A stretch of 64,000 nucleotides of DNA, taken from positions 62,001 to 126,000 of IMG/VR virus record IMGVR_UViG_3300021142_000002. One strand, written 5' to 3'. The notes beneath the pieces were generated by a model. It was not told the origin of the DNA, searched no databases, and saw only the letters and a program-made list of their open reading frames with translations. The position numbers and the translations under genes are program-made. Within the stretch, counting starts at the first letter, position 1. Each line of letters starts with the position of its first letter. Of this stretch, positions 9,659 through 61,775 are shown one piece after another.

Positions 9659-9688
9659 CTCTAGGATAGCTATATAGCTATCCTAGAG
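9659..9688. repeat. 30-bp perfect palindrome (terminator-like)
   Basis: CTCTAGGATAGCTAT|ATAGCTATCCTAGAG; displaced A-tract on the left. Confidence 0.85.
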
Positions 9689-9694
9689 ACTATG

Positions 9695-10138
9695 TTAAAG
9701 TAAATTCTTTTCTAAAAGCAGTTCGACTGTTTGATCTAACTTACAGAGTTTACTCAAAGCTTTTAATTCAGCAATCGTAAACCATTTCACTGCTTTGTGT
9801 TTTAATGGTTCTTTATTGATTATAGTGCCACTAAAATTAACCACCTCAAAGTAGGTATAGTTAGCGATTTTGATTACACGATTTTCATTATAATCAATAG
9901 TCTCATTAGTAATAACCTTTAAGTTATTTACAATGATATCTAATTCTTCAAACAGTTCACGAACTATTCCATCATGAAAGGTTTCATTATTTTCTACCTT
10001 CCCTCCTGGAAACATCCAGGAATTACATTTGACATGATCTAATAGTAATATTTTACCATGTCTTTTTATAATTCCGGATACTGCTTTTACTTTATTATCA
10101 TTCATTTTATAGTTTCTCCTTAGGGACAATACAGGCAT
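9695..10138 (-). CDS. Nudix hydrolase (likely start 10105)
   Basis: Nudix box PGGKVENNETFHDGIVRELFEELDI. Confidence 0.9.
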   Translation of the reverse strand: MPVLSLRRNYKMNDNKVKAVSGIIKRHGKILLLDHVKCNSWMFPGGKVENNETFHDGIVRELFEELDIIVNNLKVITNETIDYNENRVIKIANYTYFEVVNFSGTIINKEPLKHKAVKWFTIAELKALSKLCKLDQTVELLLEKNLL

Positions 10139-10162
10139 TGTATTACTCTAGTAAATAATGTA

Positions 10163-11488
10163 TCAAACATTTTCATTTGTTTTTAAAGATAATGCTGCTG
10201 CTGCTGAAAACAAATCATTATTGTAGAGTGCTTCAATATCATGATTAAACTTTATAATAGCTTCTGTTTTACTACCAGAGAATGTTAGTATTCCATACAT
10301 TAACTCTATTAGTGTTTTATTCTCATGCATTTTATCCAGTACTTTTTCAATACCTTTATAATCTAGCAATAGCTTTTCTTTTTGTTCTTTAGCTAGAGTA
10401 GTATCCTTTAAAGCATCATTGACTTGTTGTTTTAATTTTAATATTCTTTTATCTAATGGATCATACTCTGGGATATCTGGAGAATGTTTTATTAGCATGA
10501 CTAATATTACAAAAAAACCAATCCCTAGTGTACTCAATCCTGTTGCTACTGCAAAAAATGCAGAGCCTGCAGTAATACCAAATAGTGGACCTACAACTTC
10601 TAGAAAGAAAAAAGTTTTAGGAGATACATATTCTCTAGCGCCTTGAGTTCTATATAGCTTATCAAAGCGAGTAGCTAAATGTCTACCATAACCAAATCTA
10701 GCACAAAATTGATCGGCTAATACTTCCCATGTTCTAGCATCATAAATATCTAAATCTAATTCTCTCTTACTTTCTTCAACGGCAGCATTAAATAATAAGA
10801 CTCTATAAGAAGTTTCATTTAGATTTTGATTAGCCAGTAATTGTTTATCATCAAAAGTAATATCATATTCTTTTTCTAAAGAATGTAGGATAATTACTTT
10901 CTGTTCTACCTTAGTGGCATTGGCTAATCTTTTTACACCTTCATTGAGTAACAGATTAGTCTTTAATATTTTCCCAATAATTACAAAGTAGTAAAACCAG
11001 TGGCCTATTTCATGGAGTAATACAGCAACCACTTCCTTTACAGTATACATACTGCTATTAGATAGAAATAAATTACCTACTTCACAATATGTTTTAATCT
11101 TAGAATAATCACCTGTTACTTTAACAGTTTGTAAATTAATAGTTCCTTCAAAGTATTTCTTTTCATTTAAAATATTTAAAAAGGTTGGATTACGCACCTC
11201 ATAGTTTTCAGAAATGGTGTGATTATTTACTAATGAAGGCATGTATATACCGGCACCCAGTAAGTTAGGTCTATTAAAAAACACAATAGATAGTCCAGTA
11301 TGTTCAGATACTATTTTAGATAATGCTGATTTCTCTAATGTATCTTTTTCTATAATTAGACTATTTCTAACCTTAGTAATTTCTGCTTCTAAATCAGGTC
11401 CTAGAGTAGAGTTAAATTGATGTACAATACTCTCTATGGCATAAAAGTCTTTAATGCTTAGTTTAGGTCTCATAGCTTTTATATCCAA
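10163..11488 (-). CDS. Zincin-like metallopeptidase-domain protein, probably virion-associated
   Basis: HEXXH motif (LLHEIGH), downstream EVLADQF, and a hydrophobic hairpin near the C-terminus. Confidence 0.55.
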   Translation of the reverse strand: MDIKAMRPKLSIKDFYAIESIVHQFNSTLGPDLEAEITKVRNSLIIEKDTLEKSALSKIVSEHTGLSIVFFNRPNLLGAGIYMPSLVNNHTISENYEVRNPTFLNILNEKKYFEGTINLQTVKVTGDYSKIKTYCEVGNLFLSNSSMYTVKEVVAVLLHEIGHWFYYFVIIGKILKTNLLLNEGVKRLANATKVEQKVIILHSLEKEYDITFDDKQLLANQNLNETSYRVLLFNAAVEESKRELDLDIYDARTWEVLADQFCARFGYGRHLATRFDKLYRTQGAREYVSPKTFFFLEVVGPLFGITAGSAFFAVATGLSTLGIGFFVILVMLIKHSPDIPEYDPLDKRILKLKQQVNDALKDTTLAKEQKEKLLLDYKGIEKVLDKMHENKTLIELMYGILTFSGSKTEAIIKFNHDIEALYNNDLFSAAAALSLKTNENV

Positions 11489-11527
11489 AAAAAAATGGTT
11501 GGGTAAGTTCTATAAGATAATAAAGAT

Positions 11528-11555
11528 AAAAAAAAAAGAAGGGCCGAAGCCCCTC
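11528..11555 (-). terminator. Rho-independent terminator
   Basis: GAGGGGC-TTCG-GCCCTTC followed by T10 on the minus strand. Confidence 0.9.
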
Positions 11556-11659
11556 TTAATTATTACATGCCAGAAATAACTTCTGACACGCAGTTAAAAT
11601 AATCAAGCATATTCACCTTTAATTCTTCTGCCGTTTTGGCAGATAGAACATAATTAAGC
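11528..11659 (-). ncRNA. Candidate ~130-nt small RNA (or 15-aa peptide unit)
   Basis: Lies between a promoter-like motif and a UUCG terminator; two internal hairpins; no ORF longer than 15 aa. Confidence 0.3.
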
Positions 11660-11689
11660 AAGGTAATCATACATGAAAATAATTTGAAT
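11660..11689 (-). promoter_or_regulatory. Early-promoter-like motif
   Basis: ATTCAA-ATTATTTTCATG-TATGATTACC; upstream half nearly identical to 54918-54937. Confidence 0.5.
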
Positions 11690-11698
11690 TAACATAAA

Positions 11699-11734
11699 TA
11701 GATAGACTAGGGCTATATAGCCCTAGTCTATCTA
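11699..11734. repeat. 36-bp perfect palindrome
   Basis: TAGATAGACTAGGGCTAT|ATAGCCCTAGTCTATCTA directly after the Nudix stop. Confidence 0.85.
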
Positions 11735-11736
11735 AA

Positions 11737-12336
11737 TTAATGCAATAAATTATTGGCTATTAATACATCCATTAATTCACCTAATAGTTCTAATCTACTT
11801 AGGTTTAATAACTCTTGATAACTCACCCATCTCATCTGTGGATGTTTATGGGGTTCTTTATTAGTTACTTCATTGTCATAATCAGTAACCTTTATTACTA
11901 CAAAGTTAGTATCTGGTTTATAGACTACTGCTTTTCCACTATAGATTAATTCCATTTCTTTAATTACTATTCCTAATTCTTCCCACATCTCTCTAGTAAC
12001 TGCTTGTCTAAAAGTTTCTTCAGCATCTACTTTCCCCGCAGGAAAAACAAACTTATTCATTTTTAAATGTTCTACAATTAAAAACTTTCCATCCTTTTTA
12101 ATCATACAACTAATGACATTCTTACCAATAGCCTGTTCATCTAGATTGATAATCCTTTCATCAATGTCTTCGGTACCATGAGAGTTCTTTTCTTTCTTTT
12201 TAGTACTTTGCCAAAGACCTTCTTTTTTATCAGCATCTAGAAATTCTTTAGCTGTTTTTCTTTCTTCATCGGTAGAGTCTTTATCATGTAATTTATAAAG
12301 CCAGTAATTATGCTGGGCTTGAGATTTTGAAGGCAT
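11737..12336 (-). CDS. Nudix hydrolase with N-terminal extension
   Basis: Nudix box PAGKVDAEETFRQAVTREMWEELGI; ~55-aa charged N-terminal extension ending HGTED. Confidence 0.9.
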   Translation of the reverse strand: MPSKSQAQHNYWLYKLHDKDSTDEERKTAKEFLDADKKEGLWQSTKKKEKNSHGTEDIDERIINLDEQAIGKNVISCMIKKDGKFLIVEHLKMNKFVFPAGKVDAEETFRQAVTREMWEELGIVIKEMELIYSGKAVVYKPDTNFVVIKVTDYDNEVTNKEPHKHPQMRWVSYQELLNLSRLELLGELMDVLIANNLLH

Positions 12337-12383
12337 TTATAATACTCCTGAAAAGGGTTTTTAACTATATGATAAATAAAGGC

Positions 12384-12416
12384 AAAAAAAAAAGAGGATA
12401 ACATTAAGTTATCCTC
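12384..12416 (-). terminator. Rho-independent terminator
   Basis: GAGGATAAC/GTTATCCTC stem with an adjacent T10 on the minus strand. Confidence 0.8.
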
Positions 12417-12452
12417 CCTGACTACAATGAGTCAAGATTCCCCAGGAGATCC

Positions 12453-12626
12453 CTAGGATGTTTCACCATCTCCTTCAGTAGGAGATTCAGTGCCATCCGA
12501 GGATGAAGACTGGTTGTCAGCAGATGCTACTGGAGCATCTGCAATAATGTACTGAATAAAGGCATTGGCCGCGCCAGCGACCATGGCAGCTGCACCTGCA
12601 GCTACCATAATTGTTCTATAATTCAT
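12453..12626 (-). CDS. Small membrane/secreted protein (57 aa, not in ORF track)
   Basis: Manual translation MNYRTIMVAAGAAAMVAGAANAFIQYIIADAPVASADNQSSSSDGTESPTEGDGETS; GGAG RBS. Confidence 0.6.
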   Translation of the reverse strand: MNYRTIMVAAGAAAMVAGAANAFIQYIIADAPVASADNQSSSSDGTESPTEGDGETS

Positions 12627-12629
12627 TAT

Positions 12630-12734
12630 TTATTCTCCGGGCTGGTTTTGTGGTTTAGTTATTACTTCAATTATGGTGGTTAGGATAACCATATAGATGG
12701 TTAATCTCCCTACCACTTTAAAGAACTCAAACAT
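12630..12734 (-). CDS. Small membrane peptide (34 aa, not in ORF track)
   Basis: MFEFFKVVGRLTIYMVILTTIIEVITKPQNQPGE; strong AAGGAGG RBS. Confidence 0.65.
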   Translation of the reverse strand: MFEFFKVVGRLTIYMVILTTIIEVITKPQNQPGE

Positions 12735-12774
12735 GATATCCTCCTTATTAGGTTATACATGTAAATCCATTAAA

Positions 12775-12804
12775 ATAATATATATATATGAAAAAAATTT
12801 GAAT
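12775..12804 (-). promoter_or_regulatory. Early-promoter-like motif
   Basis: ATTCAA-N14-TATATATTAT upstream of the two small ORFs. Confidence 0.55.
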
Positions 12805-12863
12805 CCATTATTTATTATCTAAATTCAATATCTTTTGTCTAAACCTTTCAGGGACTCTATATA

Positions 12864-14543
12864 ATGAATGAAAATAAATCTAGTATTAAAAGGGAATTTG
12901 TATTTGGTACTTACTGCCCTAATAGAGTAGATAGAAATAAAGATGCTGTTTTTGTTAAAGAGATTTTACATAAAGATGGTATGATAAAAAGAAACTTAAG
13001 GATGATAGAAAACTATCAAAGACCTTTTTATATTACTAAACCAAATTACAGAGATCATCAGCAAAAGAAAGAATTTGAACATTTAGCTAAATTAGATACT
13101 TACTATACGAATCAAGCTAATTTATCTAAAAGTATCTTTAAAGTACTCAACGGCTATAGACCTAATAATTATATTTCTATTCAGGATATGAATGAATCAC
13201 CTTATGTCTATGGCACTGATGTAGCTACACCAGTACTGATAGCTAATGATTATAAAACTAAATATCCAGATTTATTAACACCTTCAACACTGGCTGTGCT
13301 GGACTATGAAACTGATGTAGTCATGGGAAAAGAATATATCATTTCTGGTGTATTAGCTATGAAAGATAAACTACATATTGCTGTATCTAAAGAGTTTTTA
13401 GGTTACTTAGCTAAAGATGCTAAAGAACTGATTAAGCAAGCTTTAAATAAGTATCTATCTGAGTACATGGAAAAAAATAAGATAGAGCCTATTATTACTA
13501 TAGTGGATAAGCCCTCTGACGTAGTATTAGCTTTAATTAAATCAGCTCATACTTGGCAACCTGACTTTGTAGCTTGCTGGAATATTAAGTTTGATATGAA
13601 TAAAATGCTAGAAGCTTTAGCGATGGATGATATAGACCCTGCTTTTGCTTTTAGTGATCCATCAGTACCTCCTGAATATAGATTTTTTAGATGGCGAGAA
13701 GATAAGGATAAAAAATCAACAGCCAGTGGTAAAGTAACCCCTAAACATATAGCTGATAAATGGCATACAGCAACCTGCCCTGCTAGTTTTTATTTTATTT
13801 GCTTAATGGCAGTCCATAGAACAGTAAGGGCCAGAGATCCTTATAGATCTAGTTATAAATTAGATGCTGTATTAAAAGACTTTGGTGTGGGTGGGAAATT
13901 AAAGTTTGAAAATCTACAAGAAGGTTTAACAGAGTTAGATTGGCATAAGGAAATGCAAAGGATGTATAAGATAGAATACATGGTCTATATGGCATGGGAT
14001 GGTGGGTCAGCGATAGAGCTAGATCAAAAAACTAAGGATGCTAGTAACTCTGTTAGAGGAATGATTGGATTATCTGAATTAAGTAATATGAAAAGTAATC
14101 CAAAAAGACTATCAGATGACATGTACTTTGAACTATTAAAAGAAGATAAAGTATTAACGGGTACTAGCAACTGTATGCGTGATGAACTCGATGCTCTTAC
14201 ACCATCCCTTGTAAATTGGATAATAACTTTACCTTCTGAGTTAGAACATCACATGGGTAGAGCATTAATCAATGAATATCCAAAGATGCATACTAACATT
14301 ACTACCCATGCCTTTGACATTGACGTAGTATCGGCCTATCCTAAAACAGAAATAGCTTTAAATGTTTCTAAAACGACTAGAGCATTAGAATTATGTAAGA
14401 TTAGCGGATTAAGTGATAAACAGCAAAAGTCATTGGGCATTAATATGACTAATGTTAAAGTCAATGCCTTATCATTAGCTGAAAAAGCTTATAAGTTTCC
14501 TGATGTAGATGTTTTACTACAAGCTTTTATAAATCAAATGTAA
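12864..14543 (+). CDS. Split family-B DNA polymerase, exonuclease-containing subunit (phiKZ gp82-like)
   Basis: ExoI LDYETD, ExoII WNIKFD, ExoIII YMAWD, and motif A-like FDIDVVSAYP. Confidence 0.8.
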   Translation: MNENKSSIKREFVFGTYCPNRVDRNKDAVFVKEILHKDGMIKRNLRMIENYQRPFYITKPNYRDHQQKKEFEHLAKLDTYYTNQANLSKSIFKVLNGYRPNNYISIQDMNESPYVYGTDVATPVLIANDYKTKYPDLLTPSTLAVLDYETDVVMGKEYIISGVLAMKDKLHIAVSKEFLGYLAKDAKELIKQALNKYLSEYMEKNKIEPIITIVDKPSDVVLALIKSAHTWQPDFVACWNIKFDMNKMLEALAMDDIDPAFAFSDPSVPPEYRFFRWREDKDKKSTASGKVTPKHIADKWHTATCPASFYFICLMAVHRTVRARDPYRSSYKLDAVLKDFGVGGKLKFENLQEGLTELDWHKEMQRMYKIEYMVYMAWDGGSAIELDQKTKDASNSVRGMIGLSELSNMKSNPKRLSDDMYFELLKEDKVLTGTSNCMRDELDALTPSLVNWIITLPSELEHHMGRALINEYPKMHTNITTHAFDIDVVSAYPKTEIALNVSKTTRALELCKISGLSDKQQKSLGINMTNVKVNALSLAEKAYKFPDVDVLLQAFINQM

Positions 14544-14559
14544 AAAAAAAGACATAGTA

Positions 14560-14592
14560 TTCCATACAGTAGCATTATGTTACTGTATGGAA
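14560..14592. terminator. Hairpin terminator between convergent genes
   Basis: TTCCATACAGTA...TACTGTATGGAA inverted repeat; A-tract on the left. Confidence 0.65.
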
Positions 14593-14604
14593 ATATGTTT
14601 ATTC

Positions 14605-15087
14605 TTATTCTTCTTTTTTAAACAAAGGGTCTAGTAACTCTACACAAGCTATTTGTAGAATTTCTTCAGTTGCTTCATAAGCATCCACTAATGATATCCT
14701 AGATAGAATGATATTGGCTATTAAGCTAAAGCATTCTCTAACACATTCAAACCATTCTTTATTAATACCGTTTAAACTGTACATATAAGCTACTACACCC
14801 TCTTTGTTAAAGAGATATTGTATTAGCCCTACCATTACATCGGTATTCATTTTATTGTCTTTAACAGCATTGTAGAGGTTTGTAATGTAATTAGTAATTA
14901 GATCATCACTAAAGCATTTATCAATAACTGTAGAGTTTTCTTTAGTTAATTGCAATAGTCTTTGAAATAACTCTTTTAAGTTAGTTTCTTCAATAGGCAT
15001 TCTGCAATTATAATCAGCTTTACTATTGGTATAGAAGACTGAAACAACGTAGTTTATTTTGTCAATTGCTAGTTCATTTAGTTTCAT
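14605..15087 (-). CDS. Hypothetical protein
   Basis: 160-aa ORF overlapping the upstream ORF by 4 nt. Confidence 0.6.
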   Translation of the reverse strand: MKLNELAIDKINYVVSVFYTNSKADYNCRMPIEETNLKELFQRLLQLTKENSTVIDKCFSDDLITNYITNLYNAVKDNKMNTDVMVGLIQYLFNKEGVVAYMYSLNGINKEWFECVRECFSLIANIILSRISLVDAYEATEEILQIACVELLDPLFKKEE

Positions 15088-15338
15088 AACTCATTAATTC
15101 CTGATAGTCTTCTAATGTTAATGTTGTTATTGAAAAGCATTTCTACTTCTTCATTGCTCGTACATCTATACCAATATAAATCATTCATTCCGGCATCACC
15201 GGTTACCGGATCATGCGTTATTCTTAAACCTTCCCACAAGACATGAGCTGTTGTACCATAGTCAGCTTTATCTTTTTCCCACTGTAATTTGTTCATATTT
15301 CCTCTAAATAAATAGTCATGTCTATGAAAGACATCCAT
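15084..15338 (-). CDS. Hypothetical protein
   Basis: 84-aa ORF. Confidence 0.5.
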   Translation of the reverse strand: MDVFHRHDYLFRGNMNKLQWEKDKADYGTTAHVLWEGLRITHDPVTGDAGMNDLYWYRCTSNEEVEMLFNNNINIRRLSGINEL

Positions 15339-15404
15339 TGGATAATGTAGTTATCAACATTTTTTGAATCTGTCCATACTATTTAAGTAATTAGGTACAA
15401 AAAA

Positions 15405-15840
15405 AAACTGAACATAAGTAGTACTACACTACCCAAACGAGTAGTGTAGTACTGATAGGCTAAGTGCTGATCACCGACGCCGCTGAGCCACTAATAATTA
15501 CATAGGTTATGAACCCCAGCTACTTTACTATAAAAGCGCTGGTGAATATATTGATTGCTGTTCGACATCAATGATTGAGGTTAATTTCATCGCCGAAATA
15601 TTTTGTTTAATGTCTCGTACTAGGAGAAAGAAATACTAACATTAAAACAAAGAATCAATATACTCATTTTTACTGGAGATTTCCACTATGGGTTAGACCG
15701 TAAACCATACAAAACGGAACATCATAATCTACTTTCTCAACAAACCATTTTCGCCAAATGTTCGCCAATAAAATGGTAGGCTAACTAAGAATGTTTCACT
15801 GGGATTCATATCCCATGCAACTACTAGTAGGTACTGCAAT
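15405..15840 (-). ncRNA. Candidate ~435-nt structured non-coding RNA
   Basis: Bounded by a consensus promoter (15842) and a hairpin plus T-tract (15405-15453); no ORF with an RBS; several helices. Confidence 0.4.
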
Positions 15841-15841
15841 A

Positions 15842-15871
15842 AGATAATGTATATTTCAAATTATCTTGAAT
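15842..15871 (-). promoter_or_regulatory. Early promoter (consensus)
   Basis: ATTCAA-N14-TACATTATCT. Confidence 0.65.
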
Positions 15872-15888
15872 TCACTCAAATAATAAAC

Positions 15889-16512
15889 TTACTGAATATT
15901 AAAAAATTTCTTTACTCGATTTAAAATAATTTCTGAAGTAGAAGAGACTAATGTACCTCTAATAGTTTCCCAGCTAATACTCTTAGCAGTAGCAAACCGA
16001 GACCCTTCATGTGCACAATCAACAAAGATCTTTACTAAAGAGAAAAACTCTCTTTGTTGTTCATTAGTGAGCATAGGCATTTTATCAACCGATGCAAACA
16101 TGTTTTCTGTCGTAAAGTGAGTGTTGAAGTTAGCATTAATGTATTTCAATAAATTTTGCATAAACTCAATAGCTTCTTCTTCTGAACCTTTAGATAAGAT
16201 TCTAGAGATACAGTTATAGAAAGTAGTTTGAGCTGCACCTACATCAGCAGGTGATCCTTGAGTAATACCTCTAAGCAGTGCAAAGGCTGATTCAAGGCGA
16301 GATGAGTTTAGAGCATCATTAGGGCACATATCTTTACCCAAAGTAGCAGGATGCACTGCATCTTCTACAACAGGGGCTACTTCTTTAGCGAGTGTATCAA
16401 AGACATTAACTACAGGTTCAGGTTGAGCAGGTACATTAGTTTCTGGCATAGCAGGGGCTATATCAGCAACCGCTGTAGTTTGTTCAGTAATAGTTTCTGT
16501 ACTATCGGACAT
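15889..16512 (-). CDS. Hypothetical protein
   Basis: 207-aa ORF; GAGG RBS; disordered N-terminus then a helical domain. Confidence 0.7.
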   Translation of the reverse strand: MSDSTETITEQTTAVADIAPAMPETNVPAQPEPVVNVFDTLAKEVAPVVEDAVHPATLGKDMCPNDALNSSRLESAFALLRGITQGSPADVGAAQTTFYNCISRILSKGSEEEAIEFMQNLLKYINANFNTHFTTENMFASVDKMPMLTNEQQREFFSLVKIFVDCAHEGSRFATAKSISWETIRGTLVSSTSEIILNRVKKFFNIQ

Positions 16513-16572
16513 GGGATTTTCCTCTTAATAGGATATTAAAGTGATAGAGTAAATTCTCTATATGATAAATAT

Positions 16573-17085
16573 TTATTTTGGTTTAATAGTGTAAAGTTTT
16601 AATTTCATAATTAATACATCGAGTACATTATGAAATTCTTGAATACCTCTGTTATTGTTAATAACAATATTGCAATCTGCCTGAGTAATGGTCATAGACT
16701 CTACATCTTCAGGTGGTAATCTTTCAGAAGCATCTACCCAGATAACTGTATCGACTAAACCAATCTTACGCATTTCTTTGAGCTCTTCAATGTTTCTTAA
16801 GCCACAGTAGATATTAGATTGACTAAAGATCAATTTACCCATTTTAGCTTTATCTTCTTCGTTATAGTCACAGATTAAATCATACCATTCTTTTCGATGA
16901 TTAACTCTATCGTTATAACACTCTTCTAAAGTCTGATAACCATATAACTCTTTTAGTTTAGGAAAGATATATTCTTCTGCTACTGCAAAACTAGAATTAG
17001 TAAATGTTAATCCAGTCTGTTCTTTAATATAGTCACAAGCAGTATCCTTGCCATGTCGTTTATGACCGGTTATAATTATATTCAT
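16573..17085 (-). CDS. Deoxynucleoside monophosphate kinase-like P-loop protein
   Basis: N-terminal ITGHKRHGKDT P-loop; GLRNIEE segment. Confidence 0.7.
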   Translation of the reverse strand: MNIIITGHKRHGKDTACDYIKEQTGLTFTNSSFAVAEEYIFPKLKELYGYQTLEECYNDRVNHRKEWYDLICDYNEEDKAKMGKLIFSQSNIYCGLRNIEELKEMRKIGLVDTVIWVDASERLPPEDVESMTITQADCNIVINNNRGIQEFHNVLDVLIMKLKLYTIKPK

Positions 17086-17141
17086 AATTTAAATGTCTCT
17101 TAATTTAAACAAATAATATTATAATTACTTTATTTAATATT

Positions 17142-18419
17142 TTAGGTTAATCTATCAAGATAGTTATAACGATGGGTTGTTAAAGCTTGTGTATGAACTA
17201 GTGCTAAGAAGATAGAGGTAAAGGTAGAAGTAATAGAGGTCATCTGAGCATTGATACCAACTTCAGACGTTGATACAATATCGCCCATACATTTTTTACA
17301 AAAAGAGGTATGCTGAGTAATGCAGTAAGTAGGTGATCTAATGATAACATGTTTGCCAATATAATGCTTTAATTCACCTGGCTTAATAGGCTCTTCTTTA
17401 CCCAATAGGTATCTGCCGATATAGTTATCATAATTATCTGATTTAATAACTATAATCAAGCCTCTAGGCGTGTGGCAATCTTCATTATTAATATTATAAT
17501 TTTGAAAGATACGTCCAGTAATCTTTACTTCTACACCTGCTAAAGCGGTTGATTGACCTCTATTAAATGATCCACCTCGAATCATATTAGCAATAGCAGG
17601 TATCTCTTTAATACCCCAGCCTTCAGATAAAGAATTAGTCATGACTGATATCTTAGACTCATCAATAAAGTCTTGTTCAGCTCCAACCATAGCGTGCGTT
17701 CTTAAACGACTATTTAATGTTTTAGGTGAAATATAAAACCGCTCAGATGGATCACCTTTTAAATACTGTTTATCTAAATCCATTAACTGATTTTGAATAT
17801 CAGATACAACAGATGGGTCATGTAATTCATCTTTATGTTTTTCTAATAATTCTTTTTTTAGTTTTTCAGCTTCAGGGTTTAGAGTCAATGTTTTACGCGT
17901 AGCACAAGGTACCGATACCATAGATAAAACAGTAATCATACAGACGGCGTTTTCAAAACGATGATGCATAGCTGTCGTACATTCATCCTTTTGCAACACA
18001 TCATACGCTATTTTGTTTAATATCTTAGGTGTCATTTCATCATTAAAATAAGGCACTAATCCCTGATAAGGATACTCTATTAATAGAGCATTCATTAATA
18101 GTCTTCCATAGATAGTTTCTATATCTTCCTTAATACACTTTAAGGTATGAGCTTTTATTTGTATTTTTTCATAGCGATCATATAAAGGTTTATCGAACTC
18201 ATAATCAGTAATGATTTCTTTTTTGCCATTATCTAAATGCACAGTTAGATGATGTCCGTCCGTTACTATACCTGTTTCATGGGATATTTTATCATCATGA
18301 TTTTTCTCAGGTAAAATACCAAAACAAGACAGTAACCAAGCTCTTTCTAAATACCTTTCTGTTTTTAATGAATAAATCATGTATTCTAATTTAGTCATTT
18401 TTATTCTCCCTATAAGCAT
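17142..18419 (-). CDS. rpoC: Virion RNA polymerase beta' subunit, C-terminal part (phiKZ gp80-like; likely start 18398)
   Basis: EDCHTPRG...IRSPTYC...FCKKCMG zinc motif of beta'; LSEGW and RGQSTA segments. Confidence 0.8.
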   Translation of the reverse strand: MLIGRIKMTKLEYMIYSLKTERYLERAWLLSCFGILPEKNHDDKISHETGIVTDGHHLTVHLDNGKKEIITDYEFDKPLYDRYEKIQIKAHTLKCIKEDIETIYGRLLMNALLIEYPYQGLVPYFNDEMTPKILNKIAYDVLQKDECTTAMHHRFENAVCMITVLSMVSVPCATRKTLTLNPEAEKLKKELLEKHKDELHDPSVVSDIQNQLMDLDKQYLKGDPSERFYISPKTLNSRLRTHAMVGAEQDFIDESKISVMTNSLSEGWGIKEIPAIANMIRGGSFNRGQSTALAGVEVKITGRIFQNYNINNEDCHTPRGLIIVIKSDNYDNYIGRYLLGKEEPIKPGELKHYIGKHVIIRSPTYCITQHTSFCKKCMGDIVSTSEVGINAQMTSITSTFTSIFLALVHTQALTTHRYNYLDRLT

Positions 18420-19245: not shown

Positions 19246-19351
19246 TCTAATACCTCTACAAATTAGATATAAATAAATAGCTAATATATATTAGCTGTAC
19301 CATACGATAAACTCGTATACTTACTATAACATTTTTAGTTGGAATATAATA

Positions 19352-23059: not shown

Positions 23060-23093
23060 ATGCTAAATGGGTAAATATTTACCCATTTAGCAT
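23060..23093. repeat. 34-bp perfect palindrome
   Basis: ATGCTAAATGGGTAAAT|ATTTACCCATTTAGCAT. Confidence 0.85.
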
Positions 23094-23591: not shown

Positions 23592-23625
23592 GTACCATAC
23601 GGTAGCCTAGGCTACCGTATGGTAC
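23592..23625. repeat. 34-bp perfect palindrome
   Basis: GTACCATACGGTAGCCT|AGGCTACCGTATGGTAC between convergent ORFs. Confidence 0.85.
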
Positions 23626-27926: not shown

Positions 27927-27956
27927 AGATAATATAGGTATAGTGATTAAATGAAT
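27927..27956 (-). promoter_or_regulatory. Early promoter
   Basis: ATTCAT-N14-TATATTATCT upstream of the helicase. Confidence 0.6.
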
Positions 27957-27978
27957 AATCACTATACCTTATTTAAGA

Positions 27979-28620
27979 TTATTTCCAAACAAATAATCTT
28001 AAATCTTTATAGCCGTTGAGTAAAGCCCTGCCATTATAGTCCCAAATTCTATCCGCACCAACAGTATCAATGTAAAAGGCTTCCGGATAACCAGCAGGCG
28101 TACACACTGTACCTAGGGCAATTAAGTAACCTTCGGAATCAGTAATGACACCAGGTCTATGACCTTCTAATATTTCACTGGCTGTAAAGAAATCAAAACT
28201 TACTTGGTTAAGCGTTTTTATCACGTAATCAAAAGAACCGTCATATAGCCCAGCACCTGATTTATCAGCCATCACTGTGCCTGTAGGTATAGCTATGTCT
28301 GATCCAACACCAGAAATAAAGGCTGGCTCTTCAGTAAACATTGTCACACCTTTTTGTTTTTTAGGCGCACTTCTATTAAATGAAGCATTCTCAAGATCTA
28401 CCCTATAATCACCGTGCGGGTATCTTTCCACAAATTCCTTTTGTTTAGCAGCAATAGCTTGTTCAGCTTCTGTATAGACAATTTCTACCTTTTCTAGTAC
28501 TTCTTCCACTGTTTTATTAATCTGTTTAATCCCTTCATGAAACCTGCATGGTATTTGTTTTTCTTCGAATACATTAATTACTTTTTCCATTGCATTGTCA
28601 AACATTTCTTTAATACACAT
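27979..28620 (-). CDS. Hypothetical protein (start revised to 28620)
   Basis: The ORF-track start at 28671 lies inside a palindrome; the ATG at 28620 has a GGAG RBS. Confidence 0.6.
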   Translation of the reverse strand: MCIKEMFDNAMEKVINVFEEKQIPCRFHEGIKQINKTVEEVLEKVEIVYTEAEQAIAAKQKEFVERYPHGDYRVDLENASFNRSAPKKQKGVTMFTEEPAFISGVGSDIAIPTGTVMADKSGAGLYDGSFDYVIKTLNQVSFDFFTASEILEGHRPGVITDSEGYLIALGTVCTPAGYPEAFYIDTVGADRIWDYNGRALLNGYKDLRLFVWK

Positions 28621-28649: not shown

Positions 28650-28679
28650 TATAGACTATGGGATATCCCATAGTCTATA
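28650..28679. repeat. 30-bp perfect palindrome
   Basis: TATAGACTATGGGAT|ATCCCATAGTCTATA after the beta' stop. Confidence 0.85.
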
Positions 28680-33164: not shown

Positions 33165-33188
33165 GAGTAGATGCAACTGCATCTACTC
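33165..33188. terminator. Hairpin between convergent genes
   Basis: GAGTAGATGCA/TGCATCTACTC. Confidence 0.65.
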
Positions 33189-37633: not shown

Positions 37634-37640
37634 TAAAACA

Positions 37641-37670
37641 CTCCTATAGAGCTCAATAGCTCTATAGGAG
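37641..37670. terminator. Hairpin terminator
   Basis: CTCCTATAGAGCT/AGCTCTATAGGAG. Confidence 0.65.
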
Positions 37671-37684
37671 TAATATTTAGTCTA

Positions 37685-41239: not shown

Positions 41240-41306
41240 TTTAACCTCCCAATTGTTGATAACATAAGGTTAGTTTAAGTCCTAAAAAAGAAAGGTTAGA
41301 AATAGA

Positions 41307-41336
41307 GATACTACCAGCTCATATGCTGGTAGTATC
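41307..41336 (-). terminator. Hairpin terminator
   Basis: GATACTACCAGC/GCTGGTAGTATC; displaced T-rich tract on the minus strand. Confidence 0.65.
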
Positions 41337-41351
41337 TAATAATTTACTTAA

Positions 41352-42845: not shown

Positions 42846-42880
42846 TTGTTGCTCCGAAAAATTAGGGAAAGAAATAACAT

Positions 42881-42910
42881 ATACTGAGACTAATTAATTA
42901 GTCTCAGTAT
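42881..42910. repeat. 30-bp perfect palindrome
   Basis: ATACTGAGACTAATT|AATTAGTCTCAGTAT. Confidence 0.85.
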
Positions 42911-42922
42911 ATTAATTAAATT

Positions 42923-47730: not shown

Positions 47731-47760
47731 AGGGATAGCAGATTTAAATCTGCTATCCCT
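47731..47760. repeat. 30-bp perfect palindrome after chmA
   Basis: AGGGATAGCAGATTT|AAATCTGCTATCCCT. Confidence 0.85.
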
Positions 47761-52453: not shown

Positions 52454-52487
52454 TGTGGATACTAGGGAGTACTCCCTAGTATCCACA
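52454..52487. repeat. 34-bp perfect palindrome
   Basis: TGTGGATACTAGGGAGT|ACTCCCTAGTATCCACA. Confidence 0.85.
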
Positions 52488-52495: not shown

Positions 52496-52687
52496 TTAGT
52501 CTATAACAGAAATAATGTTTTCTAACTTAATGTTTCTATATGGATTACTATTACTCTCCCGTGTTAAATCATTCTTCACACAAGTAATAGAGTATTCTGT
52601 AAATTCATTGCCTTCTGAATCTAGACTAATAGCAGCTGAAACAATCATGCCAACTTTAGCTGAAATTCCTTTTTCATCTTTCCACAC
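52496..52687 (-). CDS. Small SH3/KOW-like hypothetical protein
   Basis: 63+ aa; AKVGMIV pattern; start uncertain. Confidence 0.4.
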   Translation of the reverse strand: MWKDEKGISAKVGMIVSAAISLDSEGNEFTEYSITCVKNDLTRESNSNPYRNIKLENIISVID

Positions 52688-54078: not shown

Positions 54079-54345
54079 TTACATCTTTCTTCTCCCCATT
54101 AGTAATAACACTTTAGGATCAAAAACAAACTTTTCATTAACCCAGCCCACAACAGACTTTTCAATCGTATCCAAATCACGATCTACTCGCTGAATATAAT
54201 ACTCAGTTACTTTATTTACCGTATTATCAGACATAATCACTTCACTTAACCGTATCAGTGTTACCCTACCTAAAGACAGATGGTCACCATTAGTTTCTAC
54301 TAATACAAAATCATTTATCCCAAACTGTGTTTCAAAAATAGCCAT
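54079..54345 (-). CDS. SH3-like hypothetical protein
   Basis: QFGINDFVLV..GRVTLI pattern. Confidence 0.55.
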   Translation of the reverse strand: MAIFETQFGINDFVLVETNGDHLSLGRVTLIRLSEVIMSDNTVNKVTEYYIQRVDRDLDTIEKSVVGWVNEKFVFDPKVLLLMGRRKM

Positions 54346-54389
54346 CTTTATTTTCCCCTAATATTACTATTGATATTAATACATCTAAT

Positions 54390-54419
54390 AGATAATATAT
54401 AAATAACTATATATTGATT
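54390..54419 (-). promoter_or_regulatory. Early promoter
   Basis: AATCAA-N14-TATATTATCT. Confidence 0.6.
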
Positions 54420-54547
54420 AATATTAGTATTATTAATATCTACTATAAATACTAGTATTAAAGATTACTAGTATTATTAAATGAATAATAGAAACTATAC
54501 GTTTCTATTATGCTATATATTTACGTACCTATTATTACCTAAATGAG

Positions 54548-54573
54548 GATTAATACACTTAAGTGTATTAATC
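54548..54573. repeat. 26-bp perfect palindrome
   Basis: GATTAATACACTT|AAGTGTATTAATC. Confidence 0.8.
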
Positions 54574-54753
54574 ACTATTAGTATACATTAAAGAAGTATT
54601 ATTTATATACGTTAATGTAGTAGTCTATTATATACGCTAAGGAAGGTTGTTTATATATTGTTTTTACCCCCACTCCAGACCACGATTCCATCAACCCCTC
54701 GCAACCAGATTTCTCTAGTCGCGGGTAATGTATTAGTTATTCACTAAGACATA

Positions 54754-54840
54754 CTATACTGGTAATAGTAATATAAAAATAAAGAAAAAAAAAAGAATAA
54801 GTAATACAGTGCCAATAACCAAATAAATTAATTCAGTCAT
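54754..54840 (-). CDS. Hydrophobic peptide (28 aa, not in ORF track)
   Basis: MTELIYLVIGTVLLILFFFFIFILLLPV; GGAG RBS; promoter-like motif upstream. Confidence 0.6.
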   Translation of the reverse strand: MTELIYLVIGTVLLILFFFFIFILLLPV

Positions 54841-54907
54841 TTTAATCTCCTGCCCTTATAGGGACTTAAATGTTATAGTTAAATGGATTACTGGTGTAAT
54901 TCCAATT

Positions 54908-54937
54908 AAATGGTATATACATGAAAATAATTTGAAT
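54908..54937 (-). promoter_or_regulatory. Early-promoter-like motif
   Basis: ATTCAA-N14-TATACCATTT. Confidence 0.5.
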
Positions 54938-54982
54938 CCATTCTTACCGTATGTATAGCAGTCTACTAATAGAGGATAATCA

Positions 54983-56083
54983 ATGTATAGACTTTTTCCT
55001 AACCAACCTTTTGAGTTGAGTAAAACTAATTCTCCATTAATGCCTAGAATTAGAAATTTAATTTTTGATCATTATAAATACCAGCTAGAGTTTTATAATG
55101 AATATGGAGCTTACTATAATGACTCCTCTGTGATCCCTAGTAACCATGTTTTACTAAAGTTACTCTATCTATTAGCTGATTATGTTTCATATGGCAAAGA
55201 CGTTTATAGAGCGGTTAATGAGCATGTTCATCAAATCTGTTCAGTGCTTAGAATTACTAGTGAGTTTACACCAGGCGTTATTCACACCGATGCCCTATAT
55301 ACGGATACCTGTATCATAATGGCTCAGTCTTATGAAACAGAATTGTTTAATAAAACAGACTGGAAGACCATGAGGCCTTTAAGGTGTTTAACTCATCCTT
55401 TTACCAGTATGGAACTGCATGTACCTAAAGTTACTAAATCCCAATTAGGTAAAGGAATATCAGCCGTAGGAATAGATCTAGGACTATTAGGTTATATGCT
55501 ACAACAATGGCTAATTGAAAACAATATAGCCGTAGAGACTATAGCCGATGAAAGAGAATCTATTAATTTATTTCTATCCAGATTTGTAGTACCTGGATTA
55601 CTGCCTGAGCAAATAGATATTAGTTTAAGAAATAGAATGATGTTTATCTACACTGATTCTAAAGTACCTCTAGAACAGCCTGAGAGGTCTTTTGTAAAGA
55701 CTTATGAAGAAGCCCTAGTGCATCCTATGAAAATGATTTTTAATGTCATAGATACCAGTAGAGCTCGTTATTTACAGGCTTTAAAAGAAATACCTTTAGT
55801 ATTCACTGAAACTTATTTTGAAGCTATCCCTAAAGATCTCTATGGATTAAATACCTATACATACTGGGCTATGGCATTAATACTACTCGACTGGATAGAG
55901 CCCTGGATAGAAATAGTAAAAGGAGATCAAACCAGTAATACGGATATAATGAAGATATTAATTAGAGCTGATAGATTTATCTATGGAACGGGCTGTATGA
56001 GATATTGTCGATCTGATATACGAGGAGATTTCTTTAATAGGTACAAAAGACTAAAAGAAGTATTAATGAGTATGAAAGAATAG
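54983..56083 (+). CDS. Conserved phiKZ-like hypothetical protein (gp52-like by position)
   Basis: 366 aa; GAGG RBS; lone plus-strand gene upstream of chmA. Confidence 0.6.
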   Translation: MYRLFPNQPFELSKTNSPLMPRIRNLIFDHYKYQLEFYNEYGAYYNDSSVIPSNHVLLKLLYLLADYVSYGKDVYRAVNEHVHQICSVLRITSEFTPGVIHTDALYTDTCIIMAQSYETELFNKTDWKTMRPLRCLTHPFTSMELHVPKVTKSQLGKGISAVGIDLGLLGYMLQQWLIENNIAVETIADERESINLFLSRFVVPGLLPEQIDISLRNRMMFIYTDSKVPLEQPERSFVKTYEEALVHPMKMIFNVIDTSRARYLQALKEIPLVFTETYFEAIPKDLYGLNTYTYWAMALILLDWIEPWIEIVKGDQTSNTDIMKILIRADRFIYGTGCMRYCRSDIRGDFFNRYKRLKEVLMSMKE

Positions 56084-56370: not shown

Positions 56371-56402
56371 ATAGAGTAGAGTGCCTAGGCACTCTACTCT
56401 AT
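56371..56402. repeat. 32-bp perfect palindrome
   Basis: ATAGAGTAGAGTGCCT|AGGCACTCTACTCTAT. Confidence 0.85.
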
Positions 56403-56408: not shown

Positions 56409-56885
56409 TTACTCGAAAGGAGGAAAGATTGTTATATAAGAAAGATCGCTTTTATTTCTTTCAAAGTATTCTGCATAAGGATCATCAATAGGCTTACACC
56501 GAATGATATCCGATCTATCTAAATCAAAGTTGTAGTCAAAGACGAGTACTAGCTCTGAGGTTACTTTATCCTTTAGTGGTAGTCCAGCCATGTATTCTTT
56601 TTTATAACTACAGCTCATGTGCATTAGGAGAAGATTAGCTCTTGTATAGAAATCTAAGCTCTTATCACTAATGTTGAAAAAGTAATGGAGTACAGTACGG
56701 TGGAATATGATTCCCATTGTCTCTCTAAGGACTGTAGTTTTTATAGCAATCAGTAGTGTTAAAAGGACACAGGTCTGTTCGACTAACTGTCTACTTCTTA
56801 CTGTTTCAATATCGAATACTTTAAAGCTATCGGCGTTATAACGTTTTATTAGTTCATTGACTAATAATAGGATGAGTTCTTTCAT
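56409..56885 (-). CDS. Hypothetical protein (paralog 3 of triad)
   Basis: 158 aa; RANLLLMHM..Y..EYMAG. Confidence 0.65.
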   Translation of the reverse strand: MKELILLLVNELIKRYNADSFKVFDIETVRSRQLVEQTCVLLTLLIAIKTTVLRETMGIIFHRTVLHYFFNISDKSLDFYTRANLLLMHMSCSYKKEYMAGLPLKDKVTSELVLVFDYNFDLDRSDIIRCKPIDDPYAEYFERNKSDLSYITIFPPFE

Positions 56886-58606: not shown

Positions 58607-58638
58607 GGAGTAGGGATAGCCTAGGCTATCCCTACTCC
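58607..58638. repeat. 32-bp perfect palindrome
   Basis: GGAGTAGGGATAGCCT|AGGCTATCCCTACTCC. Confidence 0.85.
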
Positions 58639-61457: not shown

Positions 61458-61678
61458 TTTATTTCCCCTATAGTGTTGTACATTTCATCAACTTGTTCTT
61501 TTGAAGCAGTTTGAATAGTTTTAACATCATCCTCATACTGGGCCTCCATAGCTGCCAGTATTTCTCCTAATGTTTTCCCATCTCCTGTTAATGGGGTTGA
61601 ACGTTTTGGCAGTTCTCTACCTTCTTTATTCATCTTTTCCATTCTTTCGATATGGCGTTGTACTCTTAATGAATACAT
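61454..61678 (-). CDS. Hypothetical early protein
   Basis: 74 aa; GGAG RBS and promoter. Confidence 0.6.
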   Translation of the reverse strand: MYSLRVQRHIERMEKMNKEGRELPKRSTPLTGDGKTLGEILAAMEAQYEDDVKTIQTASKEQVDEMYNTIGEIK

Positions 61679-61719
61679 TTTGCTTCTCCTAAGATTAGTT
61701 TATTGTATTTACTACATGC

Positions 61720-61749
61720 AGATAATATATTTATTAAAAATAGTAGAAT
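61720..61749 (-). promoter_or_regulatory. Early promoter
   Basis: ATTCTA-N14-TATATTATCT. Confidence 0.6.
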
Positions 61750-61775
61750 AGAGCATTAATGCTCTATTCTACTAT
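61740..61775. repeat. 36-bp perfect palindrome
   Basis: ATAGTAGAATAGAGCATT|AATGCTCTATTCTACTAT. Confidence 0.85.

What the first reader, a model, noticed from the sequence alone, without database searches (positions are those of the whole stretch)
9659..61775. Family of twelve loop-less perfect palindromes (26-36 bp), all with a TpA centre
Sites: 9659, 11699, 23060, 23592, 28650, 42881, 47731, 52454, 54548, 56371, 58607 and 61740. Arm sequences differ, yet every centre is T|A (CCT|AGG three times, CTAT|ATAG twice, ATT|AAT twice, and others). Most follow a stop codon. Several are followed on the minus strand by TATG and then a T-tract displaced by 5-15 nt instead of an adjacent U-tract. Inference: phage-RNAP-specific terminators or RNA-processing sites, or DNA cruciform/protein-binding sites cut or recognised at TA.
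Basis: partly seen in the sequence, partly recalled or inferred. Interest (0 to 1): 0.62.

Follow-up and report, generated by a model that had tools for sequence, protein, structure and literature searches.

The report
Loop-less palindromic terminators of a jumbo phage
The twelve perfect palindromes are real and far beyond chance, and are most likely the transcription terminators of an uncultivated phiKZ-like, nucleus-forming jumbo phage: a long-stemmed, fully symmetric variant of the hairpin-plus-TTATG terminator already mapped in phiKZ.

Summary
All 12 sites are perfect, loop-less palindromes with a T|A axis. The window lies in a 220-kb viral contig (33% GC) that encodes chimallin and phiKZ-type multisubunit RNA polymerases.

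- **Not chance:** genome-wide there are 36 such palindromes with 12-19-bp arms, whereas ordinary palindromes stop at 9 bp. Of the 36, 32 have a T|A axis (p about 1e-7).
- **Terminator-like position:** they start about 6-14 nt after stop codons. Strong hairpins fill 14 of 18 convergent gaps but only 2 of 18 divergent gaps.
- **Terminator-like flank:** TATG lies within 12 nt downstream far more often than background, followed by a displaced T-run.
- **Known relative:** this matches the phiKZ and 201phi2-1 terminator motif mapped by ONT-cappable-seq (hairpin followed by TTATK). I recovered that motif in the phiKZ genome, often on both sides of the hairpin.
- **What is new:** the stems are 15-18 bp rather than 8-10 bp. 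The apex is self-complementary in 69% of hairpins, against 7-8% expected and 10% in phiKZ. Stems almost never carry a mismatch.
- **Conservation:** relatives at 40-57% protein identity share the trait at the same gene junction with unrelated sequences.

No RNA data could be obtained, so termination is inferred. The reason for the loop-less T|A symmetry is unexplained.

The parts
9659..9688 (-). Loop-less palindrome with 15-bp arms and a T|A axis. It begins 6 nt after the stop of the NUDIX-like ORF 9695-10138(-).
   Evidence: RNA hairpin -20.4 kcal/mol. Two paralogous copies elsewhere in the contig carry 1-nt indels at the axis.
11699..11734 (-). Loop-less palindrome with 18-bp arms and a T|A axis. 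It begins 2 nt after the stop of the NUDIX-like ORF 11737-12336(-). TTTATG follows on the sense strand.
23060..23093 (+). Loop-less palindrome with 17-bp arms and a T|A axis. It begins 7 nt after the stop of ORF 22618-23052(+). TATG follows directly.
23592..23625 (.). Loop-less palindrome with 17-bp arms and a CCT|AGG axis, between convergent ORFs. TATG lies on both sides, so it looks bidirectional.
   Evidence: Contigs from other assemblies break here.
28650..28679 (-). Loop-less palindrome with 15-bp arms and a T|A axis. It begins 7 nt after the stop of the RNAP subunit gene 28687-30684(-).
   Evidence: Relatives carry a hairpin at the same junction with unrelated sequence.
42879..42912 (-). 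It begins 10 nt after the stop of ORF 42923-43540(-).
47731..47760 (-). Loop-less palindrome with 15-bp arms and a T|A axis. It begins 11 nt after the stop of the chimallin gene 47772-49757(-). TTCTTATG and then a T-run follow.
52454..52487 (-). Loop-less palindrome with 17-bp arms and a GT|AC axis. It begins 8 nt after the stop of a possible 63-aa ORF 52496-52687(-). CTTATG and a T9 run follow.
54548..54573 (.). Outlier: 13-bp AT-rich arms in a 640-nt divergent intergenic region full of ATTAATAC-like repeats. Probably not a terminator.
   Evidence: (-10.9 kcal/mol).
56371..56402 (-). Loop-less palindrome with 16-bp arms and a GCCT|AGGC axis. It begins 6 nt after the stop of ORF 56409-56885(-). 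A displaced T9 run follows.
58607..58638 (-). Loop-less palindrome with 16-bp arms and a GCCT|AGGC axis. TCTATG and then a T-run follow on the sense strand.
61740..61775 (-). Loop-less palindrome with 18-bp arms and an ATT|AAT axis. It begins 4 nt after the stop of a small ORF on the minus strand.
14560..14592 (.). Family member with a 1-nt loop and one G.T mismatch (16-bp stem), between the convergent DNA polymerase gene (stop at 14543) and ORF 14605-15087(-). TATG lies on both sides.
5476..5505 (.). Family member with a 14-bp stem and axis CA instead of TA (GCC-ca-GGC), one transition away from the GCCTAGGC type.
15420..15453 (-). Looped family member with a 13-bp stem and an 8-nt loop. ACTTATG follows.
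27936..28004 (-). Two adjacent looped hairpins, each with a 14-bp stem and a 6-nt loop.
37640..37671 (.). Looped family member with a 14-bp stem and a 4-nt loop.
41306..41337 (.). Looped family member with a 13-bp stem and a 6-nt loop.
33165..33188 (.). Short family member with an 11-bp stem and axis AC. GCTTTATG follows.

Best explanation
The palindromes are transcription-unit boundaries of a phiKZ-like (Chimalliviridae-type) jumbo phage.

**Proposed mechanism**
- When transcribed in either direction, each palindrome gives a very stable RNA hairpin: 13-17 paired bases around a 4-nt N-U-A-N' apex, -16 to -28 kcal/mol.
- This hairpin stops the phage's own multisubunit RNA polymerases and caps the 3' end of the mRNA.
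- It acts together with a short downstream signal (0-5 nt, then TATG or TTAT, then pyrimidines, then a T-run).
- This is a long-stemmed, AT-rich version of the 'hairpin followed by TTATK' terminator mapped in phiKZ and 201phi2-1.
- Because the element is a palindrome, and often carries TATG on both flanks, it can work in both directions.

**Shown**
- The structure, the statistics, the position relative to genes and the flank motif.
- The presence of the phiKZ-type RNAP genes.
- The same architecture in the phiKZ genome.
- Positional conservation with sequence turnover in relatives.

**Inferred**
- That RNA 3' ends form at these sites.
- That TATG acts in termination. One possibility is that the elongating polymerase pauses when its beta-like subunit binds non-template TATG, as that subunit does at late promoters.
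- That the hairpin can begin only 6-10 nt after the stop codon because transcription inside the phage nucleus is uncoupled from translation.

**Not explained**
- Why the apex is self-complementary and centred on T|A.
For: **Identity of the phage**
- Chimallin (Pfam PF25677) is at 47772-49757.
- phiKZ-type RNAP subunits are at 28687-30684, 30696-32726 and 45918-47087. One is 33% identical to phiKZ gp71-73.
- A gp123 homologue lies elsewhere in the contig.

**Position relative to genes**
- All 36 long palindromes are intergenic, mostly 2-24 nt after a stop codon.
- A strong hairpin is present in 14 of 18 convergent, 44 of 177 co-directional and 2 of 18 divergent intergenic regions. Fisher p for convergent against divergent is 1.3e-4.

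**Flanks**
- TATG lies within 12 nt downstream in 15 of 45 sense sides (p 1e-8), 14 of 28 convergent sides (p 5e-11) and 8 of 45 antisense sides, against 5.5% background.
- The enrichment is highest where a promoter would make no sense.
- The T fraction is higher downstream, and the sequence upstream is A-rich.

**Known counterpart**
- phiKZ terminators mapped by ONT-cappable-seq share a stem-loop followed by a TTAT region, with a similar motif in 201phi2-1 (PMC10914365; PMC11512511).
- My scan of phiKZ found 69 perfect stems of 8 bp or more flanked by TTAT(G), many on both sides. Where I checked against the annotation, they sit 6-14 nt after stop codons.
- The six GC-rich loop-less phiKZ examples all have a T|A axis.

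**Conservation**
- Relatives at 40-57% identity in the RNAP subunit carry 12-19-bp hairpins, half of them loop-less.
- One lies 10-20 nt after the orthologous RNAP gene, with unrelated arm sequences.

**Stability**
- Folding energies are -16 to -28 kcal/mol. The median for TATG-flanked hairpins is -22 here and -17 in phiKZ.
Against: - There is no transcript data.
- TATG is present at only about a third to a half of sides, and is weak in the closest relatives.
- The T-run is displaced by 5-15 nt, which does not fit the canonical hairpin-plus-adjacent-U-tract mechanism.
- TATG is also the phiKZ late-promoter core with the start at G (PMC4666361), so it could be an initiation signal rather than a termination signal.
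- RNA-level selection alone does not predict a self-complementary loop, the 59:10 excess of even over odd loops, or the near absence of G.U pairs and mismatches.
- The purine-rich 5' arm here is the opposite of the C-rich 5' arm in phiKZ.
Confidence: 0.7

Rival explanations
1. The element is a combined terminator and promoter. The hairpin ends the upstream transcript, and the TATG just after it is the start site (at G) for the non-virion RNAP to transcribe the next gene. On this reading TATG is an initiation signal, not part of termination.
For: [quoted passage not shown]
- A gp123 homologue is present in the contig.
- The next gene usually starts 20-130 nt after the hairpin.
Against: - TATG is most frequent on the sides of convergent-gene hairpins (14 of 28), where initiation would only give antisense RNA.
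- In phiKZ the well-studied late promoter P119L lies in a divergent region without any such hairpin.
- phiKZ late promoters show no upstream conservation (PMC7598289).
Confidence: 0.15
2. The hairpins are only 3'-end protection or processing elements. They block 3'-to-5' exonucleases, or serve as substrates for a double-strand-specific RNase, on long read-through transcripts. The polymerase does not stop at them.
For: - The hairpins are very stable and sit right after stop codons.
- The T-run is not adjacent to the stem.
- Long perfect stems resemble RNase III-type substrates (my own knowledge).
Against: - No RNase III or dsRBD domain was found in the contig, although a host enzyme could act.
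- The phiKZ counterparts were classed as termination sites, and selected 201phi2-1 terminators worked in a terminator trap.
- The strong enrichment in convergent gaps and the directional TATG signal fit polymerase stopping.
Confidence: 0.12
3. The elements are read as DNA. Either supercoiling extrudes the perfect palindromes as cruciforms or the non-template strand folds into a hairpin. Alternatively a two-fold symmetric protein binds the axis, for example at GCCTAGGC. Either event blocks or regulates the polymerase, replication or packaging.
For: - Only a DNA-level reading directly predicts a self-complementary apex (38 of 55 against 7-8% expected, p 1e-29), an even total length (59:10) and strictly Watson-Crick arms.
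- The T|A step is the easiest to unstack (my own knowledge).
- All 11 GCCTAGGC octamers in the contig lie on palindrome axes.
- The flanks are AT-rich.
Against: - Arms are unrelated between sites, and information content away from the axis is low.
- The commonest apex is GC-rich around TA, which disfavours central melting.
- About 40% of equally long hairpins carry ordinary loops at equivalent positions, including paralogues and orthologous junctions, so symmetry is not required.
- The GCCTAGGC group may simply share ancestry.
Confidence: 0.08
4. The perfect symmetry is a mutational by-product rather than a selected feature. Long inverted repeats are kept, or made, perfect by template switching between the arms during replication (quasi-palindrome correction or inverted duplication at short palindromic microhomologies). 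The hairpins are still terminators, but loop-lessness and the T|A axis have no function.
For: [quoted passage not shown]
- Stems here are almost always mismatch-free although similar-looking sites (for example the GCCTAGGC group) differ at several positions, each mirrored in the other arm.
- Paralogous copies differ by 1-nt indels exactly at the axis, which shows that the axis is mutable and tolerant.
- Short TA-centred palindromes outnumber AT-centred ones in the background.
Against: - Fold-back template switching needs a loop and does not by itself symmetrise it.
- The background TA share (43-65%) does not reach 89%.
- CTAG makes up 42% of apexes but only 5.6% of palindromic tetramers in the genome, which points to selection on the apex.
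- phiKZ does not show the effect (10 of 101).
Confidence: 0.2

Closest known systems
phiKZ / 201phi2-1 conserved intrinsic terminator motif (stem-loop followed by a TTAT region; ONT-cappable-seq, PMC10914365 and PMC11512511)
   Same: - Found in a nucleus-forming jumbo phage with its own multisubunit RNAPs.
- The hairpin sits a few nt after the stop codon.
- TTATG or TATG and pyrimidines follow directly, then a T-rich stretch, often mirrored on the other side.
- Purines and pyrimidines are segregated between the two arms.
- The loop-less examples have a T|A axis.
   Different: - Stems are 15-18 bp and AT-rich instead of 8-10 bp and GC-rich.
- The 5' arm is purine-rich (G:C 2:1) instead of C-rich.
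- The apex is self-complementary in 69% of cases against 10%. phiKZ mostly uses UUCG or 5-nt loops.
- Arm sequences vary widely instead of following a single consensus.
Bacterial bidirectional intrinsic terminators (A-tract, hairpin, U-tract)
   Same: - Concentrated between convergent genes.
- A-rich upstream and T-rich downstream.
- The hairpin is usable from both strands.
   Different: - The T-run is displaced 5-15 nt by a TATG-containing spacer.
- Stems are far longer and mismatch-free.
- The hairpin starts 6-10 nt after the stop codon. In E. coli that spacing represses a terminator through the ribosome (PMC4824070, abstract seen).
- Only a handful of canonical hairpin-plus-adjacent-U-run sites exist in this contig.
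Mimivirus 'hairpin rule' (palindromes marking mRNA 3' ends in giant eukaryotic viruses; recalled from memory, not checked here)
   Same: AT-rich large virus with its own transcription machinery. Intergenic palindromes of variable sequence mark transcript ends.
   Different: A different viral realm and polymerase. There the hairpin is a processing and polyadenylation signal. No homology is implied, and the comparison was not tested.
REP/BIME-type or MITE-like intergenic palindromic repeats
   Same: Intergenic, after stop codons and palindromic. A few copies are clearly paralogous, flanks included.
   Different: - There is no shared repeat consensus across the 36 sites.
- No transposase association was seen.
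- Arm sequences are site-specific.

Membership tests
phiKZ-type (Chimalliviridae) hairpin-TTATK terminator | The genome encodes phiKZ-like virion and non-virion multisubunit RNAPs and is independent of host RNAP. | tested here: met
   RNAP subunit homologues were found together with chimallin. Independence from host RNAP is inferred from family membership.
phiKZ-type (Chimalliviridae) hairpin-TTATK terminator | A stable stem-loop lies at gene 3' ends or in intergenic regions. | tested here: met
   The gap from stop codon to hairpin is mostly 2-24 nt. Hairpins fill 14 of 18 convergent gaps and 2 of 18 divergent gaps.
phiKZ-type (Chimalliviridae) hairpin-TTATK terminator | A conserved TTAT(K)YY tail lies directly 3' of the stem. 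| tested here: met
   TATG lies within 12 nt on 33-50% of sense sides against 5.5% background. TATG or TTAT is present in 28 of 45. The signal is enriched but not universal.
phiKZ-type (Chimalliviridae) hairpin-TTATK terminator | The consensus stem is CCYCCCC / GGGRRGG (8-9 bp) with a 4-nt AT-rich loop. | tested here: not met
   Stems are 12-19 bp with variable sequence and a G-rich 5' arm, and most have no free loop. For this reason I file it as a variant, not a copy of the motif.
phiKZ-type (Chimalliviridae) hairpin-TTATK terminator | RNA 3' ends map at the element. | not testable with these tools
No reads were laid.
Canonical bacterial intrinsic terminator | A GC-rich hairpin is immediately followed (0-2 nt) by a U-tract. 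| tested here: inconclusive
   The consensus scan flagged 3 of the 5 palindromes in 9001-29000 through T-rich tails. With a strict T-run criterion only a handful of sites qualify genome-wide. Real T-runs are displaced 5-15 nt.
Operator or dimeric-protein binding palindrome | A conserved half-site sequence is shared by the sites. | tested here: not met
   Axis-anchored information content is about 1 bit at position 1, 0.4-0.8 bits at positions 2-4 and near zero further out.
Dispersed repeat (REP/MITE-like) | The copies share sequence, including flanks. | tested here: not met
   Only one triplet of paralogous copies was found. The other arms are unrelated.
Cruciform-forming DNA element | The cruciform extrudes in supercoiled DNA. 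| not testable with these tools
   This needs nuclease or chemical probing.

The most novel reading that the evidence does not exclude
The complete two-fold symmetry (no loop, T|A axis, Watson-Crick pairs only, even length) is selected because the phage's non-canonical multisubunit RNAP terminates with help from DNA structure. This would be a non-template-strand hairpin or an extruded cruciform, together with recognition of non-template TATG by the beta-like subunit. That would be a termination mechanism distinct from the RNA-hairpin-plus-U-tract rule of cellular RNAPs.
Probability: 0.1. Interest if true: 0.75.

Novelty: new variant of a known kind. Interest (0 to 1): 0.4.

Why it matters
- Termination by the sigma-less, split-subunit RNA polymerases of nucleus-forming jumbo phages is poorly understood. 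Only a sequence motif is known, from phiKZ and 201phi2-1.
- This uncultivated, deeply divergent lineage keeps the hairpin-plus-TATG architecture while changing every other parameter. That singles out TATG and the hairpin as the conserved core.
- The termination tail is the same four bases that the beta-like subunit reads at late promoters. This gives a directly testable idea for how these polymerases pause and release.
- The extreme symmetry of the hairpins is a clean, quantifiable anomaly. It could report either a DNA-level step in termination or an active palindrome-perfecting mutational process in phage replication.
- Practically, these sites can be used to delimit transcription units in related metagenomic phages, and they explain why assemblies of these phages break at such points.

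Tried and rejected
- **Close relatives for counting compensatory changes:**
  - The phage collection had no nucleotide match.
  - Single-protein scans of viral contigs found nothing.
  - Identical-protein contigs were 99.8-100% identical and showed no variation in the palindromes.
  - The next relatives are only 57% identical or less in protein, so only positional conservation could be assessed.
  - Two look-ups had no DNA on file, and records behind metagenome loci could not be extended.
- **gp123 homology of the gene upstream of 28650:** it is not the phiKZ gp123 homologue. The gp123 homologue lies outside the window.
- **phiKZ motif as an exact pattern:** my transcription of the motif found nothing in phiKZ. 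A structural scan did find it.
- **Supplementary terminator tables** of the phiKZ paper are not held.
- **Phage-encoded RNase III or dsRBD:** none found.
- **Bidirectional use as the cause of loop-lessness:** loop-less sites make up 10 of 14 hairpins in convergent gaps and 23 of 44 in co-directional gaps, p 0.23.
- **Wobble test for RNA-level selection:** only about 7 mismatched sites exist and they show no strand preference, so the test is inconclusive.
- **GC content against stem length across loci:** there is a trend only (rho -0.47, p 0.17, n 10).
- **Assembly artefact:** rejected, because the palindromes sit inside long contigs from independent assemblies.
- **tRNA, known RNA family or CRISPR:** rejected.
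Full report
**1. Observation**

The twelve listed sites are exact palindromes without a spacer, and each has T|A at the axis.
- The site given as 42881 extends to 42879-42912.
- The window is bases 62001-126000 of a 220,366-bp viral contig with 33% G+C.
- In that contig the arm lengths of perfect palindromes are bimodal. The background tail ends at 9 bp, and a separate class of 36 sites has arms of 12-19 bp with a mode of 16-17.
- Second-order Markov shuffles give a longest arm of 8-13 bp and at most four palindromes with arms of 10 bp or more.
- The axis is T|A in 32 sites and A|T in 4. T|A is 43-47% of self-complementary dinucleotides, so p is 1e-8 to 1e-7.

**2. What the genome is**

- ORF 47772-49757(-) is a chimallin (phage-nucleus shell protein; Pfam PF25677).
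- ORFs 28687-30684(-), 30696-32726(-) and 45918-47087(-) are phiKZ-type RNA polymerase subunits. One is 33% identical to phiKZ gp71-73.
- A homologue of gp123 lies elsewhere in the contig.
- The nearest cultured phages share 36% or less protein identity.

It is therefore a deep, uncultivated relative of the nucleus-forming jumbo phages, which transcribe with their own polymerases. The same phage occurs almost unchanged in several independent metagenome assemblies.

**3. Anatomy and context**

- All 36 palindromes are intergenic and begin mostly 2-24 nt, typically 6-10 nt, after the stop codon of the upstream gene.
- With loops allowed, the contig holds 69 strong hairpins: 40 loop-less and 29 with loops of 1-9 nt. 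The window has 22, of which 13 are loop-less.
- A strong hairpin is present in 14 of 18 convergent, 44 of 177 co-directional and 2 of 18 divergent intergenic regions. Fisher p for convergent against divergent is 1.3e-4. This is the distribution expected of terminators.
- Downstream in the direction of transcription come 0-5 nt, then TATG or TTAT, then pyrimidines, and often a T-run starting 5-15 nt from the stem.
- TATG within 12 nt occurs on 15 of 45 sense sides, 8 of 45 antisense sides and 14 of 28 sides at convergent genes, against 5.5% background.
- As RNA the palindromes fold at -16 to -28 kcal/mol with a 4-nt apex.
- The 5' arm is purine-rich, with G:C of 158:76. The apex consensus is RRRRGCCT|AGGCYYYY.

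**4. Link to what is known**

- ONT-cappable-seq of phiKZ found that most of its predicted intrinsic terminators share a stem-loop followed by a TTAT region, written as BCCYCCCCHWWDGGGRRGGBYTTATKYYGT (PMC10914365).
- 201phi2-1 has a strongly similar motif, and selected terminators from that phage worked in a terminator trap (PMC11512511).
- I fetched the phiKZ genome and found 69 perfect stems of 8 bp or more with TTAT(G) within 9 nt. Many have it on both sides, that is CATAA, hairpin, TTATG.
- Where I checked against the annotation, these stems sit 6-14 nt after stop codons.
- The loops are mostly UUCG or 5 nt. The six GC-rich loop-less cases all have a T|A axis.

TATG is also the core of phiKZ late promoters, with the start at G (PMC4666361). 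[quoted passage not shown] I infer that the same pocket could pause an elongating polymerase at TATG just after the hairpin has formed. This is an untested idea.

A promoter role for these TATGs is less likely for two reasons:
- They are most frequent at convergent gene ends.
- The model late promoter P119L has no such hairpin.

A hairpin that begins only 6-10 nt after a stop codon would be masked by the ribosome in a coupled system (PMC4824070, abstract only). It is unproblematic if transcription occurs inside a phage nucleus. This too is inference.

**5. What is different here**

- Stems have a median of 16 bp, against 8 bp in phiKZ. Folding energies are similar or somewhat stronger, at -22 against -17 kcal/mol.
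- Among even-length hairpins with at least 9 bp outside the central four bases, the central tetranucleotide is self-complementary in 38 of 55. Only 7-8% of tetramers in this genome are self-complementary, giving p 1e-29. In phiKZ the figure is 10 of 101.
- Even loops outnumber odd loops 59:10.
- CTAG makes up 42% of apexes but 5.6% of palindromic tetramers. All 11 GCCTAGGC octamers in the contig lie on axes.
- Stems are almost always free of mismatches or G.T pairs. About seven family-like sites carry one or two transitions, against about sixty perfect ones.

**6. Relatives**

- A protein search found a clade at 40-58% identity.
- Its contigs (L007, L008, L009/L037, L039) carry 12-19-bp hairpins, half of them loop-less and mostly with a T|A axis.
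- One lies 10-20 nt after the orthologous RNAP gene in four lineages. Arm sequences are unrelated, and both loop-less and looped states occur.
- Among 75 more distant chimallivirus-like loci, 48 of 154 apexes are self-complementary, with T|A again commonest.

The trait is graded across the family and strongest in this clade. Three paralogous copies within the contig differ by 1-nt indels exactly at the axis, giving a loop-less form, a 3-nt loop and a 5-nt loop. Symmetry is therefore favoured but not obligatory.

**7. Interpretation**

The best-supported reading (confidence about 0.7) is that these are terminators and 3'-end hairpins for the phage RNAPs, usable in both directions, and a long-stemmed variant of the phiKZ-type element.

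The loop-less T|A symmetry is not explained by RNA folding alone. Three candidate explanations remain:
- A DNA-level step (cruciform or non-template-strand hairpin).
- Selection for a particular apex such as C-CUAG-G.
- Arm-to-arm template switching that keeps long inverted repeats perfect (PMC3820800).

None could be tested here.

Site 54548 is probably not a family member. It has short AT-rich arms, lies in a divergent repeat-rich region, and is built from an over-represented ATTAATAC-like motif.

**8. Limits**

- No RNA data could be obtained.
- Gene calls are my own simple ORF filter.
- The perfect-palindrome set is defined by perfection, so the fair measure of stem perfection is the mismatch-tolerant scan.
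- The comparison with Mimivirus and some remarks on DNA and RNA loop chemistry rest on memory.

Noticed in passing
window 44657-45867 (-), with ORF 45918-47087 (-): Three group I introns lie in tandem (Rfam RF00028, 54-91 bits) directly downstream of an ORF that matches only the first 380 of 478 positions of an RNAP beta-subunit family. This looks like an intron-split RNAP subunit gene, as reported for phiKZ-like phages.
   Followed up: partly
window 2124, 4131, 11758, 14760, 20674, 24707, 26035, 37403, 54374, 56247, 62826: TATTAATAC, often as the 10-bp palindrome GTATTAATAC, occurs 15 times against 3.1 expected (0 of 100 shuffles reach 15). Several copies lie inside genes. It may be a promoter or another recognition motif.
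   Followed up: no
window 54345-54983: This 640-nt divergent, very AT-rich intergenic region is packed with inverted and direct ATTAATA-type repeats and holds the outlier palindrome 54548. It is a candidate regulatory region or replication origin.
   Followed up: no
window 23596 and 28651 (loci L013, L014, L017): Contigs of the same phage from other assemblies end exactly at palindromes 23592 and 28650. Perfect palindromes appear to break de Bruijn assemblies of these phages.
   Followed up: partly
window 11536-11557 (-) and 12391-12419 (-): Two conventional-looking terminators are present: a short GC-rich hairpin (one with a UUCG loop) immediately followed by a T8-T9 run. The first lies 140 nt downstream of palindrome 11699 in the same gap. 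They may represent a second, rare terminator class.
   Followed up: partly
genome 71659 (= window 9659), 150040, 190095 (loci L001-L003): Three paralogous terminator cassettes of about 55-60 nt, flanks included, are 89-93% identical. They differ by 1-nt indels at the axis, giving a loop-less form, a 5-nt loop and a 3-nt loop.
   Followed up: partly
window 9695-10138 (-) and 11737-12336 (-): Two NUDIX-hydrolase-like paralogues lie 1.6 kb apart, each followed within 2-6 nt by a loop-less palindrome.
   Followed up: no
window 23094-23104: ORF 23102-23575(+) starts only 8 nt after the 3' arm of palindrome 23060-23093. This leaves no room for a free ribosome-binding site.
   Followed up: no
genome 189477-189508 (outside the window): A hairpin with a C10 homopolymer loop lies 4 nt from the loop-less palindrome at genome 189438-189473.
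   Followed up: no
L008:12390-12419 and L008:2239-2264: A relative carries 13-15-bp loop-less palindromes with a G|C axis inside called genes, including the helicase gene. This is unlike the intergenic T|A class.
   Followed up: no
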